Shown: positions 36,251 to 42,059, counted from the stretch's first letter. The stretch is 64,000 nt of DNA from Salpingoeca rosetta (GCA_033442325.1 JAWQFM010000003.1:1961490-2025489); one strand, 5' to 3'. Numbers and translations: made by a program. The notes: generated by a model not told the origin, from the letters alone.

Positions 36251-38771
36251 TTACCTGCGGCTCCTGCTGTTGCTGCGGGCACGCGTGCGCTTCGACCGCT
36301 TCGCACTTGGCTCCTCGTCAGACACATCATCCTTGTTGGAGGTGTTCTTCTTGCCCTTTGAGCGCTGGCGCGTGGCGGGCGGAGAGAACATGTCGTGCTC
36401 AGCAGGTGCAGGCGTGGTCTCGCGATCGCCCTGCGTCTGTCCCTTGTTTGCGCGCCCACGGGTTGCCTTGGTGCGTGTCTCCTCTTCCTCTTGCTCTTCC
36501 CCCTCTTGTTCTTGCTCTTGCTCTTGCTCTTGCTCTTCCTCTTGCTCTTGCTCTTCCTCTTCATTGTCGCTGTTGTGGTCGACGATGGCCAGCAAGCGCT
36601 CCTGCAACTCCGCCTTGCGCCCGCGCACTTCTGCACCAACCTCGCTCAGCACGGCACGAAGCTCCGCCACCTTCATGGCCATGATCTGCTCGCGTGACAG
36701 CTCAAGGTCAACGTCCTCTTCTTCCTCTTCTTCCTCTTCCTCCTCTTCCTCCTTTTCCTCCTCATCATCATCACTGCCTTCTGCCTCGGCTTCATCTTCC
36801 TCAACAGCGTTGCCCTGTGAAGTCTCAGCGTCACTGGCCTCGTTTGCCGTTTCCTGGGCTCCAGCTGCATGTTCCTGCTCTTCCTCTGCCTCCTCCTCCT
36901 CCTCCTCTGCGTGCTGTTCGTTCTGATTTGCCTCAGCGCTCGCATCGTTCGCGGCAGAGGCGCGGATGGCATCGAGCAGGCGCTCCTGTAGCTGCTTCTT
37001 GCGGCCAGCAGCAGACACGCCAATCTCAGACAGCGCATGTCGCAGATCGTTCATCTTCATGCTCATCACGTCATCCTCTGTCAGCCCAAGCTTGGACGCC
37101 GCAGTGTCGTTGCCGCCCTCCTCCTCCTCCTCCTCCTCATTGTCTTCCTCCTCCTCTTCCGCATCAGCAGCAACAGCAGCAGCAGCATCGTCATGTCCTT
37201 CATCTGCTGATTCGTCCTCGTCCTCCTCCTCTTGCATGGCAGCGCCAGTATCCTTGTCCTCCTGCTCCTGTCCAACCTCCTGCTCCTCATCTTCCTCGTA
37301 TTCCTCATCTTCCTCCTCTTCCTCCTCTTCCTCGGTGCGCTCAGGGATGACAGAGAGCTTGCGCTTCTCAAAACTCAGCTTCGGGCCCCGCAACTCGTCC
37401 TCGTCGCGAGGGCTGGGCTCCAGGGCAATCGACAGCCGCGACTGCAGCTCCGCCTTGCGGCCGCTGGTGGACAGCCCGCGTGCCTCCAGCTCGGCCCGCA
37501 GCTCCTTGCACGTCATCGACTTGACGTCCAGGCGACTGGGCTCCGGGTGGCGCGGTGCGAGCTGCTTGCGCTCCATCTTCTTCTGGCTGGACCGCGTCAG
37601 ATACGCGCGCTGCGGTGGCGACGCCGGCTCAGGCGTCCGCATGCCATCCTCTGCTTCATCCTCAGCCTCATCATCACCCGCCTGTTCTGCGTTGGGCTGC
37701 GCCTTGACGGGCATGCTTGGGGCAGACTCCGTGCCTTCCTGTGCCTGTTCATCGTCGTCGTCAGCTTTCGCCTCATCCTGCATTGCTGCGGCCTTGGCAC
37801 CATGCTCGTCATCCTCTGCCTGCTCCCGCATTTGCTCGGCTTCGGCGGCAGTTGGCATGGTTTCCTCGGCGGTGGCTGTTGTCTCCTCGGATGTCTGGTC
37901 ATCGACCTCGGCAGAAGGTGCAGCAGCAGCATCCTGCTCTTGCCCCTCCTCAGCCGTTTCCTCTCCGACTGCGCCCTTGTCCTCGTCGTGCTCTTGTGCC
38001 ACTTGCGCATTGGGCTCTTCCTCAGCAACACCATCACCACCTTCCTCTTCCTCAAGGACTTCTTCCTCTTCCTCCTCATCCTCATCCTCATCCATCTCTT
38101 CATCTTCTTGCTCCTCAGCCTCGTCCTCCTCCATCTCCTCCTCAGCGTCTTCCTCGACTTCCTCGACTTCCTCGACAACCTCCACCACCATTTCATCCTT
38201 ATCCTGCACAGCCTCCTGCTCCTTCTCCTCCTCATCTTCTTGCTTCTCTTGCTCCTCTTCCTTAACCTCTTCCACAACCTTCTCCACAACCTCTTCTTCC
38301 TCGTCGGCAGCTGCTGCCACGGGCTTCAGTGCAACGCCGCGGCGAACAGCCTCCCGTGTGGGCGTGTTCAGGCTCTTCTTGTACAGAGTCTTGAGCGCAA
38401 TCCCTTGCTGCACCTCCCGCCGCACCGGTGACGGCAGCACGTGCTGTGCCTCGTTGGCGTCTTCGCGTGCCTGTGCGACAATCTCCTCCTGCAGGTGTGC
38501 GGGGAGAGCGCGGGCGCGGCTGAGGCGGTAGCGGCGCTCGCGGCGCTTCAGCAGCCGCTGCGCAGCGTTGACGGAGATGGTCACCATCTTTGGGCACTGG
38601 TTCAGGGCCCGGCGGATCGGGTGGCACAGCGAGGGGGCATATGGCACAAAGCGAAGCCCGCGGGGGCGAGAGCGCTTGCGCTTCACATTCGCAGCAGCAG
38701 CCTTTGCAATGGCCAGTGCCATGGCCTGCTGGTCTTCCTCGTCCTCCTCGTCTTGCTCTGCTTCGTCATCC

Positions 38772-38808
<37 letters not shown>

Positions 38809-40104
38809 CTGCCGCCACATTGGCGCTGTTGTCTTCCCCCATGGGCATCGAAACGTCTTCCTGCTCAGCCTCAGCGGCACTCGCATCGCTGCCTTCCTCC
38901 TCGTCCGCAGAATCGTCTTTTCCCTCTTCCTCTTCTTCCTCCACATCTTCGTCATCGTGCATCACAACAGCAACCTCCTCGACTTGTACGGCCTCGGTCA
39001 CTTCCTCATCTTCGTCGTGTTCATCCGCAGGTGTAGCCTTCACCTTCTTCAGAGTCACGCCCTCCTTGATCTGCTCGCGCACAGGCGTGTTGAGTGCCTT
39101 CTTGTACACCTTGTTCAGCTCCTTGCCTTCCTTCAGCTGCTGACGCACGGGTGTCGCAAGGCCCTTTTTGTACACCTTGTTCAGCTCCTTGCCCGCTTTG
39201 ATCTGAGCACGCACGGGTGTTGCCAGGCCTTTCTTGTACACCTTGTTGAGGTTGGCGCCGCCTTGGATTTGCTGGCGGAGAGGGGTCGCGAGTGCCTTCT
39301 TCTTGGCCTGCGTAGTCTCTGTGTCTTGGGTAACAGTCTTCTTCAGAGTCACGCCCTCCTTGATCTGTTCACGCACAGGCGTGTTGAGTGCCTTCTTGTA
39401 CACCTTGTTCAGCTCCTTGCCTTCCTTCAGCTGCTGACGCACGGGTGTCGCAAGGCCCTTCTTGTACACCTTGTGCAGCTCCTTGCCCGCTTTGATCTGG
39501 GCACGGAGAGGCGTCGCGAGTGCCTTCTTCTTGGCCTGCTTGTCCGTGTCTTGGGTAACAGTCTTCTTCAGAGCCACGCCCACCTTGATCTGCTCGCGCA
39601 CAGGCGTGTTGAGTGCCTTCTTGTACACCTTGTTCAGCTCCTTGCCTTCCTTCAGCTGCTGACGCACGGGTGTCGCAAGGCCCTTTTTGTACACCTTGTT
39701 CAGCTCCTTGCCCGCTTTGATCTCCTTGCGAAGCGGCGTCGACGCTGCCTTCTTGTACACCTTGTTAAGGTTGGCGCCGCCTTGGATTTGCTGGCGGAGA
39801 GGAGTGGCAAGCGCCTTCTTCTTGGCCTGCTTGTTCTCCTGCTGCGTGGCTGCAGGCTTTGGGCTGTTGAGGTCAATCAAGTCCTGGTCAGACTCTGTGG
39901 AGGCGTCAAGGTTCAGCTTTGGCGGTGTCTGCTGCATCTTCTTGGGCGTGGTCGCCCTGGACTTCTTCTTGCGCTGCGATGTTGGGCGCGAGCCAACCGT
40001 CTCACCCGCCTCATCCGACTCTGGAATCCTCTACACACCACAACCACGGACCAACATGCATGTAAGTACCGGGTGCATGCACACATGTGGGCGTGTGTGT
40101 GTGT

Positions 40105-40147
<43 letters not shown>

Positions 40148-41823
40148 TGTGTGTGTGTGTGTGTTTGTGTTTGTGTGTGTGTGTGTGTTTGTGTTTGTGT
40201 GTGTGTGTGTGTTTGTGTTTGTGTGTGTGTGTGTGTTTGTTTGTGCGCCGTGTGCGCGAGCAGAGGTGTGCCACCGTCTCAACGTGACACTTCCACGGAC
40301 ACACAAGCAATTGGGGGCAAGCGACGACACCTTGAGGATGGGCACGAGGGCGCTCCTGCGCTTGACAGAGACGGGCCGCGGTGATGCACCACGCTTCAGC
40401 GGCGTGCTGGGCGGCAAGTCCTTGTCGAAGATCTCTGGAGACAGCGGGTCGGAGAACCCCACGCTACGACGACGTGGTGCGAGCGCAGGGGAGGCGCCCG
40501 TGCTGCCCCGCTTGCTGTCATTGGCGGTCGCAGCAGCCGTTGCTGCCTTGTTCTTCTTCTTGAGGGAGCTCTTTGGTAGCTTTGTGGCAGCAGGGGATAC
40601 CGTGTTGCTGGGTGTCTTTGAGCGGGGGCCGCCGGCACCAGCGTTGCGGTCCTGCAGTGGAGTGGAACGGCGTGAGCTCTTCTTGCTTGCAGACGCGGGG
40701 TTGGACTGTTCATGTGGGATGTTGTGCGGTTATGTGTGTGTATGTGTGTGTGTAGGTGGGTGTGTGTGGGCGTGCGCGCAGGGGTGTTGGTGCATTTGGG
40801 CATGTGAACAACGGCAACAAGGGAAATATGAACAACAGCCAGAAGCAAGCATGGTGTGGGTGCTGTGCGTATGTGTGCGCACACATCCCAAAAAAAAAAA
40901 ACACTGCTACAGACAGTGGCACCACGCAAAGCCACAGCTCCAAGCAAGTAACCCAAACGCACACAAACACACGCACACAACACACGCACAGATGCACATA
41001 AACAGACGCACATGCACACACGCGCACACACGCACACACGCACACAAACACATGCAGACACGCGCCGTCACACACGTCAACGCACCTTCTTTGGGGTGGA
41101 GAGGATACGCTCGTTGGGAAAGTGGAAGCGAAAGCGGCGCTCGGCAATGGTGATGACATCGCCGTCCTTGAGCTCCCGTGACTTGTCAACAACAGCGCCG
41201 TTCACCAGCGTCGCATTGTAGCCAGAGTCTGCTGCGATGACAAGCTACAGCAGCAATGAAGGAAACAGTTTGCCACAGGGGGTCCACATGTGAGTTTGGG
41301 TGCGAGAAATGAGGCTGAGGACAGCAAAGGTAGTGGTGGTGGTGCAACAATGTCACGAAGCAGGAACGTGCATGCTGGAGTCAAAGCATGACACTGCGGT
41401 GCCTTGAGCACGGGCGGAGCAAGCGAGCGTACCTTGCCGCTGTCTCCCTTGCGGATGCTGGCGTGGTGCTGTGAGACTTTTGGGTTTTGAATGCGAATGT
41501 CACATTGCAAGTCCCTGCATAACAGTACACGTGTGTGCGTGTGTGTGTGCGTGTGTGTGCGTGTGTGTGTGTGTGCGTGTGTGTGAGTCGACATGCAACG
41601 GAGGAACAATAAGGAACAAGGCACAACTCCTGCACAAGCTATCTGCACGTCGAGCCAGTGTGTGTGTTTTTTTTTGTGTGTGTGTGTGTGAGCACCCTCA
41701 GGCCGCTTAGCAAGTGACAGACCTGCCAAAGGAGCAGGAGTCTTTGGTGATGTTGTAGATGGAGCCATCCTTTCCCGTCTTCTTCTTGATCACCACAAGG
41801 TGACCAACGACGTTGGAAGCCAT
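36251..41823 (-). CDS. Ki-67-like protein (~1498 aa): FHA + PP1-docking motif + tandem 22-aa repeats + acidic region + 3 SAP domains
   Basis: Exons 41723-41823, 41433-41514, 41086-41244, 40331-40705 and 36251-40030 join in frame at GT/AG. FHA: HLVVIKKKTGKDGSIYNITKDSCSFGRDLQCDIRIQNPKVSQHH..NATLVNGAVVDKSRELKDGDVITIAERRFRF. PP1 motif: RRRSVGFSDPLSPEIFDKDLPPSTPLKRGASP. SAP pattern: MxxxELRxxL...G....GRKAELQxRL, three times. Confidence 0.85.
39040..39817 (-). repeat. Coding tandem repeat: 11 units of 66 bp (22 aa), KxLxTP(L/V)RxQIKxGxxL(N/K)KV
   Basis: Read directly from the translation. Two units are extended by a TVTQD..QAKK spacer. Confidence 0.95.
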
Positions 41824-42037
41824 ATCGGGCAACAGCCTGCGTGTCTTTGTGTGGTGTGTGTCTGCCTTGTGTGTGTCTGTGGATGCCTTGTGGATGCGTG
41901 TGTGTATGCGTGTGTGTCTCTGTGTCTTCCGTGTCTGCCTTGTGTATGCGTGTGTATGTGTGTGTATGCGTGTGTGTGTGCGTGATGAATGGCTTTGTGC
42001 GTGTCTTTCATCTGCTCCGCCACGGAAACCGCCAGCA

Positions 42038-42059
42038 GCGAAATTTCAAATTTCGCGCC
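42038..42059 (-). promoter_or_regulatory. Candidate E2F/CDE-CHR cell-cycle element (GGCGC-GAAA-TTTGAA) within a perfect 9-bp inverted repeat
   Basis: The minus strand reads GGCGCGAAATTTGAAATTTCGC, about 220 bp upstream of the Ki-67-like ATG, in the region shared head-to-head with HSP60. Confidence 0.55.

What the first reader, a model, noticed from the sequence alone, without database searches (positions are those of the whole stretch)
36251..41823. A Ki-67-like protein in an apparently unicellular, non-animal eukaryote, with a rewired C-terminal half
Seen: five exons splice in frame to ~1498 aa with the order FHA, PP1-docking motif, TP-bearing tandem repeats, chromatin-binding C-terminus. 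Known: vertebrate Ki-67 (MKI67) has the same order (FHA, PP1-binding, Ki-67 repeats, LR domain) and is usually described as vertebrate-restricted. The FHA here follows the recalled human sequence closely (CSFGRDLQCDIRIQNPKVSQHH vs CLFGRGIECDIRIQLPVVSKQH; TLVNG..LKDGDVITIAERRFRF vs TQVNG..LKHGDVITIIDRSFRY). Inference: this is a pre-animal Ki-67/RepoMan orthologue in which unrelated 22-aa repeats and three SAP domains fill the positions of the Ki-67 repeats and LR domain. Caveat: Ki-67-type FHA domains may already be annotated in some non-vertebrates, so the novelty lies in the whole architecture.
Basis: partly seen in the sequence, partly recalled or inferred. Interest (0 to 1): 0.92.

Follow-up and report, generated by a model that had tools for sequence, protein, structure and literature searches.

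The report
Choanoflagellate Ki-67-family gene with SAP domains
This is a real, expressed, single-copy choanoflagellate relative of the cell-proliferation protein Ki-67; such relatives outside vertebrates were reported in a June 2026 preprint, but this one carries DNA-binding SAP domains, long acidic stretches and old actin-binding-like repeats that the papers I could search do not mention.

Summary
Five GT..AG exons on the minus strand (41823..36251) give a 1498-aa protein, and spliced RNA contigs from two studies join all five exons. The order is Ki-67-type FHA, PP1 dock (RVxF plus KiR-SLiM), 11+2 repeats of 22 aa each with a TPxR CDK site, then three SAP domains.

Ki-67-family orthology is well supported:
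- Human Ki-67 is the best solved-structure match for both the FHA and the PP1 motif.
- A vertebrate Ki-67 FHA finds only this gene in the 55-Mb genome.
- It is the genome's only PP1_bind locus.
- Both FHA introns sit at the same position and phase in jellyfish and carp Ki-67 genes.

A June 2026 preprint and RefSeq names already place Ki-67-like proteins outside vertebrates, including in Monosiga and Capsaspora. The 22-aa repeats are not a rewiring: sponge, cnidarian and one fungal family member share them, while vertebrate Ki-67 shows none.

What looks new:
- SAP domains occur only in the choanoflagellate-type members.
- The net charge is acidic (pI 4.7), against pI 9.4-11 in the ten relatives computed, apart from its closest one (5.8).
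- The repeats resemble WH2 motifs, and a model docks one in actin's WH2 cleft.

The look-ups returned no note from other DNA.

The parts
36251..41823 (-). Whole coding region: 5 exons, 1498 aa, stop at 36253-36251
   Evidence: Splicing and translation. Spliced RNA contigs join all exons.
41723..41823 (-). Exon 1: FHA part 1 (aa 1-33 plus 2 nt). The following intron is phase 2, inside the Arg codon of FGR.
   Evidence: The same intron position and phase occur in jellyfish (L002) and carp mki67 (L001).
41433..41514 (-). Exon 2: FHA part 2 (DLQCDIRIQNPKVSQHHASIRKGDSGK). The following intron is phase 0.
   Evidence: Pfam FHA E=6e-5. Best PDB match is human Ki-67 FHA. The intron is shared with jellyfish and carp.
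41086..41244 (-). Exon 3: FHA part 3 and the start of the linker
   Evidence: PDB best hit is human Ki-67 FHA 2AFF/1R21, E=3.5e-6. A gecko Ki-67 FHA hits it in the whole-genome search.
40331..40705 (-). Exon 4: basic S/T-P-rich linker carrying the PP1 dock
40367..40471 (-). PP1-binding motif: RVxF-type RSVGF followed by a KiR-SLiM-like SDPLSPEIFDKDLPPSTPLKRG
   Evidence: Pfam PP1_bind E=3.7e-11. PDB: Ki-67:PP1 peptide 5J28 E=1.2e-7, RepoMan 5IOH/5INB about 4e-6. It is the only PP1_bind locus in the genome.
39026..39820 (-). Eleven 22-aa repeats (KKxLxTP[LV]RxQIxxGxxLNKVY) in three super-repeats of 4, 3 and 4 units. Each carries a full CDK consensus TPxR. The units are WH2-like.
38303..38446 (-). 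Two degenerate copies of the same repeat, at the end of the basic middle segment
38723..39025 (-). First of five D/E-rich acidic tracts. The others are about aa 813-1040, 1136-1215, 1266-1345 and 1393-1424.
   Evidence: Charge analysis
37340..37627 (-). Extended SAP1 module (SAP at 37412-37531), 59-66% identical in other choanoflagellates
   Evidence: Pfam SAP, local SAP HMM, BLASTP against P0002 and P0005
36956..37075 (-). SAP2
36572..36691 (-). SAP3
36254..36475 (-). Basic C-terminal tail (pI 11.5)
42045..42058 (-). GCGCGAAATTTGAA: an E2F/CDE-like site plus a CHR-like TTTGAA, in sense orientation about 220-235 nt upstream of the ATG. Candidate cell-cycle promoter element, not tested for function.
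   Evidence: Only match in the window, 0.53 expected by chance. Sibling note s1-435383.

Best explanation
The locus is the single Ki-67/RepoMan-family gene of a craspedid choanoflagellate. The closest named protein relative is from Barroeca monosierra, and the genome is 55.4 Mb. It is transcribed as one five-exon mRNA encoding 1498 aa.

Shown: an N-terminal Ki-67-type FHA domain with the Gly-Arg, Ser-x-x-His and Asn phosphothreonine-binding residues; an RVxF plus KiR-SLiM PP1 dock; 13 copies of a 22-aa basic repeat, each with a TPxR CDK site; three SAP domains separated by long acidic tracts; and a short basic tail.

Inferred mechanism, by analogy with Ki-67 and RepoMan: the protein is a chromatin-tethered scaffold. 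The SAP domains and the basic tail would hold it on DNA. The dock would recruit the PP1 catalytic subunit. The FHA would bind a phosphothreonine partner such as an NIFK-like protein. CDK phosphorylation of the repeats would switch their charge and their binding in mitosis.

Evolutionary reading: FHA, PP1 dock and the 22-aa repeats are ancestral, being shared with sponge and cnidarian Ki-67-like proteins. The SAP domains are a choanoflagellate addition. The acidic tracts are recent, seen only in this species and, more weakly, in Barroeca.
For: - Gene model and single transcript.
- Domains.
- PP1 motif: best PDB match is the Ki-67 peptide bound to PP1 (5J28, 1.2e-7), then RepoMan.
- FHA: the Barroeca orthologue's FHA, 69% identical to the window's, hits human Ki-67 FHA at 6e-18, while the next FHA of any kind scores 3e-5. 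Window exons 3 and 2 on their own also have Ki-67 FHA as best hit.
- Reciprocal search: a gecko Ki-67 FHA against the whole genome hits only exons 3 and 1 of this gene.
- Only one PP1_bind locus in the genome.
- Intron 1 (phase 2 in the Arg of FGR) and intron 2 (phase 0) are at identical positions in Rhopilema Ki-67-like and carp mki67.
- Chain of homology: window to sponge and cnidarian 'Ki-67-like' proteins, and cnidarian to vertebrate Ki-67 at E 1e-31 to 1e-39.
- Repeat HMM: 10-35 copies in the sponge and cnidarian members fetched, 3 in a fungus, none in the named vertebrate Ki-67 proteins.
- SAP in only 5 of 281 family and related proteins fetched. The named ones are choanoflagellates.
- Charge.
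Against: - No K167R repeat (PF08065) and no detectable LR-domain similarity.
- The protein is strongly acidic overall (pI 4.66, net -137), whereas Ki-67 proteins are described as highly basic and the other relatives computed have pI 9.4-11. A positively charged brush or surfactant mechanism cannot simply be transferred.
- Localisation, PP1 binding, DNA binding, CDK phosphorylation and cell-cycle expression were not measured.
- No formal FHA tree with curated outgroups was built. The FHA assignment rests on E-value gaps, the reciprocal search and intron positions.
- The whole FHA could not be submitted as one sequence because it is split over three exons.
Confidence: 0.82

Rival explanations
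1. The 22-aa repeats are working WH2-type G-actin-binding motifs gated by CDK phosphorylation. On this reading the protein, and the ancestral Ki-67-like protein, links or regulates actin at chromatin, and the repeats are more than a charged disordered spacer. This can coexist with the best explanation.
For: - The repeat profile searched against all PDB sequences returns mostly WH2-actin co-crystal chains at the top: N-WASP 3M3N E=9.9e-5, 2VCP, Spire 3MN7, WASP 2A3Z, MIM 2D1K and VopL 3M1F. That is 6 of 9 hits.
- Pfam WH2 gives sub-threshold hits in three lineages: window 18.6 bits, jellyfish 17.9, P0137 18.1.
- hhalign against bona fide WH2 motifs of the same genome gives P=1.2e-4 and probability 55%.
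- Complex model with an actin of the same genome scores 0.83 against a best control of 0.13. That mark was reached by 51 of 78 solved complexes and 2 of 108 mismatched pairs. Partner pLDDT is at least 66 and the runs agree in at least 78% of contacts.
- The interface is actin's cleft between subdomains 1 and 3 (residues 144-149, 167-170, 342-353) plus residues 24-29. Ile16 and Leu12 of the repeat sit in the cleft and Leu22 of LNKV lies on residues 24-25, which I recognise as the WH2 pose.
- The hydrophobic positions and the Leu of LNKV/LRKT are conserved across the family.
Against: - Every Pfam WH2 score is below the 23.1-bit cut-off. Hydra and the sponges give no WH2 hit.
- In the genome-wide scan this gene ranks 10th of 12 (E=0.39).
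- The second Leu of the WH2 'LLxxI' is an invariant Arg here, and an invariant Pro shortens the helix.
- The model's pass may come from memorised WH2-actin structures, and the test is not calibrated for peptides or disordered chains.
- WH2 is a short, easily convergent motif.
- A role for actin binding in a presumably chromosomal protein is speculative.
Confidence: 0.2
2. The architecture is convergent. On this reading an unrelated FHA protein acquired a PP1-binding motif and repeats independently, and the gene is not orthologous to Ki-67.
For: FHA domains and RVxF motifs are widespread. The disordered remainder has no detectable similarity to vertebrate Ki-67.
Against: - There is a 13-order E-value gap between Ki-67 FHA and every other solved FHA.
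- The extended KiR-SLiM, not only the RVxF, is conserved.
- Two intron positions and phases are shared with cnidarian and vertebrate genes.
- The reciprocal whole-genome search hits only this gene.
- There is a continuous chain of homologues through sponges and cnidarians.
Confidence: 0.04
3. The model is a gene-prediction artefact: two neighbouring genes, a small FHA/PP1 gene and a large repeat/SAP gene, wrongly joined.
For: The large exon has its own ATG-initiated ORF of 1228 aa. Raw 3'-biased reads barely cover exons 1-4.
Against: Spliced contigs from two studies bridge exon 5 to exons 4, 3, 2 and 1 at exact GT..AG junctions. Orthologues in Barroeca, Mylnosiga and P0137 carry the same parts in a single protein.
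Confidence: 0.02

Closest known systems
Vertebrate Ki-67 (MKI67)
   Same: N-terminal FHA of the same subtype, PP1 dock (RVxF plus KiR-SLiM) downstream of it, a long mostly low-complexity remainder with tandem repeats carrying CDK sites, and a C-terminal end with predicted DNA-binding capacity. Two FHA intron positions and phases are shared with carp mki67.
   Different: No K167R repeats and no recognisable LR domain. It has three SAP domains, 22-aa repeats in place of the long K167R repeats (122 aa in human), a net charge of -137 (pI 4.66) where Ki-67 is strongly basic, and about half the length.
Non-vertebrate 'Ki-67-like' proteins: RefSeq names in Corticium, Oscarella, Rhopilema and Montipora, and the homologues listed in bioRxiv 10.64898/2026.06.18.733134
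   Same: FHA plus PP1_bind plus the same 21-22-aa KKxLxTPLRxxIxxGxxL repeat family. The preprint already lists putative homologues in the choanoflagellate Monosiga and in Capsaspora.
   Different: The animal members have no SAP domains and are basic (pI 9.7-11). The preprint does not mention SAP domains, the shared repeat consensus or actin.
RepoMan (CDCA2)
   Same: The same PP1_bind/KiR-SLiM dock (PDB 5IOH and 5INB, E about 4e-6). The genome has a single family member, which fits a state before the Ki-67/RepoMan duplication that PMC8354752 calls probable.
   Different: RepoMan has no FHA domain, which is my own knowledge of the family and was not tested here. This protein has one.
Tandem WH2 proteins (N-WASP, Spire, Cobl, VopL)
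   Same: Tandem short motifs with an amphipathic helix followed six residues later by an L-[KRN]-K-[VT] element. One unit is modelled in actin's WH2 cleft.
   Different: Below the Pfam WH2 cut-off. The units have Arg in place of the second Leu, an invariant TP CDK site at the helix start, 13 or more copies, and sit in a presumably nuclear FHA/PP1/SAP protein.

Membership tests
Ki-67 (MKI67) family | N-terminal FHA domain of the Ki-67 subtype | tested here: met
   Best PDB hits are human Ki-67 FHA for exon 3 (3.5e-6), exon 2 (0.07, top hit) and the Barroeca orthologue (6e-18, against 3e-5 for the next FHA). The reciprocal genome search hits only this gene. Two introns are shared with jellyfish and carp genes.
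Ki-67 (MKI67) family | PP1-binding RVxF plus KiR-SLiM (Pfam PP1_bind) downstream of the FHA | tested here: met
   PF15276 E=3.7e-11, 43.5 bits against a cut-off of 27. Best PDB hit is the 5J28 Ki-67 peptide.
Ki-67 (MKI67) family | K167R (Ki-67) repeats, PF08065 | tested here: not met
   No PF08065 hit at E<=1 on the large exon. The 22-aa repeat HMM finds nothing in the named vertebrate Ki-67 proteins (E>0.3).
Ki-67 (MKI67) family | C-terminal LR chromatin-binding domain | tested here: inconclusive
   There is no Pfam model for it. A TRS/LRS motif count gave no consistent signal, even among vertebrates. The window has SAP x3 plus a basic tail at this position.
Ki-67 (MKI67) family | Strongly basic, largely disordered protein with many S/T-P sites | tested here: not met
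   pI 4.66 and net charge -137. Only the N-terminal 572 aa are basic (+79). There are 30 S/T-P sites, 17 of them full CDK consensus. Eight of the ten relatives computed have pI 9.4-11. Disorder was not computed.
Ki-67 (MKI67) family | Perichromosomal or nucleolar localisation and proliferation-linked expression | not testable with these tools
   There is only a CDE/CHR-like promoter motif at 42045-42058.
RepoMan (CDCA2) | PP1_bind without an FHA domain | tested here: not met
   An FHA is present.
SAP domain (PF02037) | Match to the SAP helix-extended-helix motif above Pfam's cut-off | tested here: met
   Three stretches, E=1.4e-30, 104.7 bits against a cut-off of 23.9.
WH2 motif (PF02205) | Pfam WH2 score above the cut-off of 23.1 bits | tested here: not met
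   18.6 bits for the whole large exon. Three of 28 single units hit, best E=0.0012. The genome scan gives 17.1 bits, rank 10 of 12.
WH2 motif (PF02205) | Binds the actin cleft between subdomains 1 and 3 | tested here: inconclusive
   The model supports this: score 0.83 against a best control of 0.13, a mark reached by 51 of 78 solved complexes and 2 of 108 mismatched pairs. Partner pLDDT is at least 66 and contact agreement at least 78%. It may reflect memorised WH2-actin structures. No measurement exists.

The most novel reading that the evidence does not exclude
The ancestral repeat of the Ki-67 family is conserved from choanoflagellates through sponges and cnidarians and is not detectable in the vertebrate and two crustacean members fetched. 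It would be a CDK-gated WH2-type G-actin-binding motif. Early Ki-67-like proteins would then have coupled chromatin (here through SAP domains) and PP1 to actin in a cell-cycle-dependent way. The vertebrate K167R 'brush' would be a later replacement.
Probability: 0.18. Interest if true: 0.85.

Novelty: new variant of a known kind. Interest (0 to 1): 0.52.

Why it matters
Ki-67 is among the most widely used markers in pathology, yet its function and origin are still debated. Its apparent restriction to vertebrates was called puzzling until a June 2026 preprint.

This gene adds several things to that picture. It is a well-supported, single-copy, intron-conserved orthologue in a choanoflagellate. 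If the species is Salpingoeca rosetta, as the genome size and the nearest relative suggest, it belongs to a lineage with laboratory genetics (my own knowledge). The sequence also points to experiments:
- A repeat family is shared by choanoflagellate, sponge and cnidarian members, so the disordered part is not sequence-free 'biophysics only'.
- A variant tethers through SAP domains.
- The net charge is inverted, which tests how far the electrostatic surfactant model generalises.
- The repeats may be linked to actin.

The basic claim, a Ki-67 outside animals, is no longer new.

Tried and rejected
- LR-domain likeness: counts of TRS/LRS-type motifs in C-termini gave no consistent signal, even among vertebrates. 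Dropped.
- K167R relation of the repeats: no Pfam hit and no repeat-HMM hit in vertebrate Ki-67. No relation can be claimed.
- Locus look-ups for sponge (P0001) and coral (P0014, P0016) genes found no record. Intron comparison was therefore limited to jellyfish and carp.
- The third intron is not conserved: window phase 0 at aa 114, jellyfish phase 1 at aa 113, carp phase 2 in SFR.
- The apparent read 'joints' 37231->38067, 36500->38926 and similar have sides of only 19-22 nt and lie in GAG/GAA acidic-tract repeats. Their loose ends continue into other sequence. I take them for cross-mapping from other acidic genes, not splicing.
- The weak Pfam hits TGS, ThiS, DUF4948, HeH and COMP, and the exon-3 PDB hits to actin chains (E about 0.007-0.06), are chance or low-complexity matches. 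They are unrelated to the WH2 idea.
- The first homologue search was swamped by acidic words: only 8 hits among 8000 candidates. It was repeated on the repeat region alone.
- The window's own protein was not returned by the protein database, so the spliced full-length sequence could not be sent to the structure or representative searches. Exons and the Barroeca orthologue were used in its place.
- A formal FHA tree with named outgroups was not built.

Full report
GENE MODEL. On the minus strand, five exons splice in frame through four GT..AG introns: 41823-41723, 41514-41433, 41244-41086, 40705-40331 and 40030-36251. The product is 1498 aa. ATG 41823 is the first in-frame ATG after a stop. The N-terminus aligns from residue 1 with the Barroeca orthologue.

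A 1130-nt contig of run X7 and contigs of run X8, from different studies, cross 40030|40331, 40705|41086, 41244|41433 and 41514|41723. They run on into at least 127 nt of 5' UTR. Raw reads are 3'-biased and lie as expected for a minus-strand RNA. Other 'joints' inside the large exon have 19-22-nt sides in GAG/GAA tracts, and I read them as cross-mapping.

DOMAINS. Pfam finds the following:
- FHA: exon 2 alone E=6e-5, above the cut-off; exon 3 E=1.2e-3.
- PP1_bind PF15276: E=3.7e-11.
- Three SAP stretches: E=1.4e-30.

The PP1 segment RRSVGFSDPLSPEIFDKDLPPSTPLKRG has as its best solved relatives the Ki-67 peptide bound to PP1 (5J28, 1.2e-7) and the RepoMan peptides (5IOH and 5INB, about 4e-6). 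The FHA keeps Gly-Arg, Ser-x-x-His and Asn. These are the canonical phosphothreonine-binding residues, which I state from established knowledge of FHA domains.

ORTHOLOGY. Six lines of evidence agree:
1. Human Ki-67 FHA (2AFF, 1R21) is the top solved match for window exon 3 (3.5e-6) and exon 2 (0.07). For the FHA of the Barroeca orthologue, which is 69% identical to the window's over 109 aa, it scores 6e-18, and the next FHA of any family scores 3e-5.
2. A gecko Ki-67 FHA searched against the whole 55.4-Mb genome hits only exon 3 and exon 1 of this gene.
3. The genome holds one PP1_bind locus, and it is this one.
4. Homologues form a chain. The large exon finds the sponge Corticium 'Ki-67-like' protein, jellyfish and coral proteins, and choanoflagellate proteins. 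The jellyfish N-terminus in turn finds vertebrate Ki-67 at 1e-31 to 1e-39.
5. A profile of the N-termini read against 1.84 billion proteins gives 188 hits below 1e-30. All ten drawn from the lower part of the best-150 list and looked up were family members: eight vertebrates, of which seven are annotated as Ki-67, and two crustaceans.
6. Intron 1 (phase 2, in the Arg of FGR) and intron 2 (phase 0, after the GK/KE that aligns with GDSGK) are at the same positions in the Rhopilema gene (L002) and in carp mki67 (L001). The third intron differs in all three.

No tree with curated outgroups was built.

ORGANISM. The nearest named protein is from the choanoflagellate Barroeca monosierra, then Mylnosiga fluctuans. 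The genome is 55.4 Mb in 68 contigs. A craspedid choanoflagellate is the obvious reading. Salpingoeca rosetta is my guess from the genome size and that kinship, and it was not shown.

REPEATS. Eleven regular 22-aa units (39026-39820) and two degenerate ones (38303-38446) share KKxLxTP[LV]RxQIxxGxxL[NK]KV. Each has a full CDK consensus TPxR. An HMM of the unit gave these results:
- 10-35 copies in proteins that were not used to build it: Montipora, Acropora, Rhopilema, Hydra and the sponge Oscarella.
- 3 copies in the fungus Jimgerdemannia.
- None in the named vertebrate Ki-67 proteins (E>0.3).
- None in two crustacean members.

Of the 26 database proteins found with the repeat region, 24 carry PP1_bind and one more carries FHA; only the Aurelia model has no domain on record. 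The repeats are thus a family-specific, ancient element and not a local rewiring. They show no detectable relation to K167R.

WH2 LIKENESS.
- The repeat profile against all PDB sequences puts WH2-actin co-crystal chains in 6 of its 9 hits. The best is N-WASP 3M3N at 9.9e-5.
- Pfam WH2 gives sub-threshold hits in the window, a jellyfish and P0137, but none in Hydra or the sponges.
- Genome-wide, this gene ranks 10th of 12 WH2-like places.
- hhalign against six bona fide WH2 motifs of the same genome gives P=1.2e-4 and probability 55%.
- A complex model of one unit with an intronless actin of the same genome scored 0.83, against a best control of 0.13. That mark was reached by 51 of 78 solved complexes and 2 of 108 mismatched pairs. 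Partner pLDDT was at least 66 and contact agreement at least 78%.
- The unit lies in the cleft between subdomains 1 and 3, with its LNKV on residues 24-25.

The tool warns that such a pass can come from memory of solved WH2-actin complexes and that peptides are outside its calibration. I rate real actin binding at about one in five.

SAP DOMAINS AND CHARGE. A local SAP HMM finds SAP domains in only 5 of 281 fetched family and related proteins: the window, Barroeca, Mylnosiga and two unnamed environmental proteins. The extended SAP1 module is 59-66% identical among choanoflagellates. The protein has pI 4.66 and net charge -137. Residues 1-572 are basic (+79), and five D/E tracts sit between the later modules. 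Barroeca has pI 5.8, and the other nine relatives computed have pI 9.4-11. The acidic tracts are therefore recent.

LITERATURE. bioRxiv 10.64898/2026.06.18.733134 describes Ki-67-like proteins across non-vertebrates. It lists putative homologues in Monosiga brevicollis and Capsaspora, and notes the N-terminal FHA, a PP1 motif, repeats, basic pI and CDK sites. It contains no mention of SAP domains, actin or a shared repeat consensus. No paper in the library joins Ki-67 with 'SAP domain', and none links it meaningfully with 'WH2 motif'. PMC8354752 states that RepoMan probably arose by duplication of Ki-67. That fits the single family member found here.

MECHANISM. Shown: the parts and their order, and the single transcript. 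Inferred:
- SAP domains and the basic tail tether the protein to DNA.
- The dock recruits PP1.
- The FHA binds a phosphothreonine partner.
- CDK sites switch the repeats in mitosis.

The inverted net charge means that the surfactant model should not be assumed to apply.

VERDICT. This is a sound observation of a Ki-67-family orthologue. The headline novelty has been overtaken by the preprint and by RefSeq names. What remains of value is the SAP-bearing acidic variant, the deep conservation of the repeat, and its possible link to actin.

Noticed in passing
window 42045-42058 (-), with TTTCGCGC at 42051-42058 (+): GCGCGAAATTTGAA, an E2F/CDE-like site followed by a CHR-like TTTGAA, lies in sense orientation about 220-235 nt upstream of the ATG. 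It is the only such composite in the 64-kb window (0.53 expected by chance). The E2F octamer alone is at chance level (6 found, 5.2 expected). From my own memory, human MKI67 is regulated through CHR/CDE elements; this was not checked.
   Followed up: partly
window 40080-40240, 40720-40790, 40950-41080, 41530-41580, 41840-41990: Long (TG)n/(CA)n-type microsatellites fill the introns and the 5' flank of the gene.
   Followed up: no
window 36493, 36538, 36661 and 40973: Base differences between the assembly and the RNA reads or contigs: G>C, C>G, G>A and G>A. Those at 36493 and 36538 lie in the (CTCTTG)n tract that encodes the EQ repeats near the C-terminus, so they may be repeat-register variants or strain differences.
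   Followed up: no
window 37231-38093: Hundreds of reads end at 37212/37231 and 38067/38089 with 19-22-nt matches and then continue into other sequence. The acidic GAG/GAA tracts attract reads from other acidic-tract genes, which inflates depth in bins 37076-37270 and 38051-38245.
   Followed up: partly
L004 (G000:C2:2719584-2720714), L005, L006: Three conventional actin genes with near-identical Pfam scores are each covered by one open frame. In L004 the whole 376-aa coding sequence is one intronless ORF, unlike the intron-rich gene studied here.
   Followed up: partly
P0281 (Hydra vulgaris), P0278 (Macrobrachium nipponense), P0147 (Geodia barretti): Family members carry misleading or empty public names ('kinesin-like protein KIF20B', 'proteoglycan 4-like', 'hypothetical protein'). 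Several environmental gene models of 800-1000 aa have PP1_bind and the repeats but lack the FHA, probably because the small 5' exons were missed.
   Followed up: no
window 40378-40398 (RRRSVGF): Choanoflagellate members, the sponge Corticium and two unnamed proteins (P0141, P0143) use RRSVxF. The cnidarian and vertebrate members examined use K[RK][VI][ST]F. The serine thus sits before the Val, not inside the RVxF.
   Followed up: no
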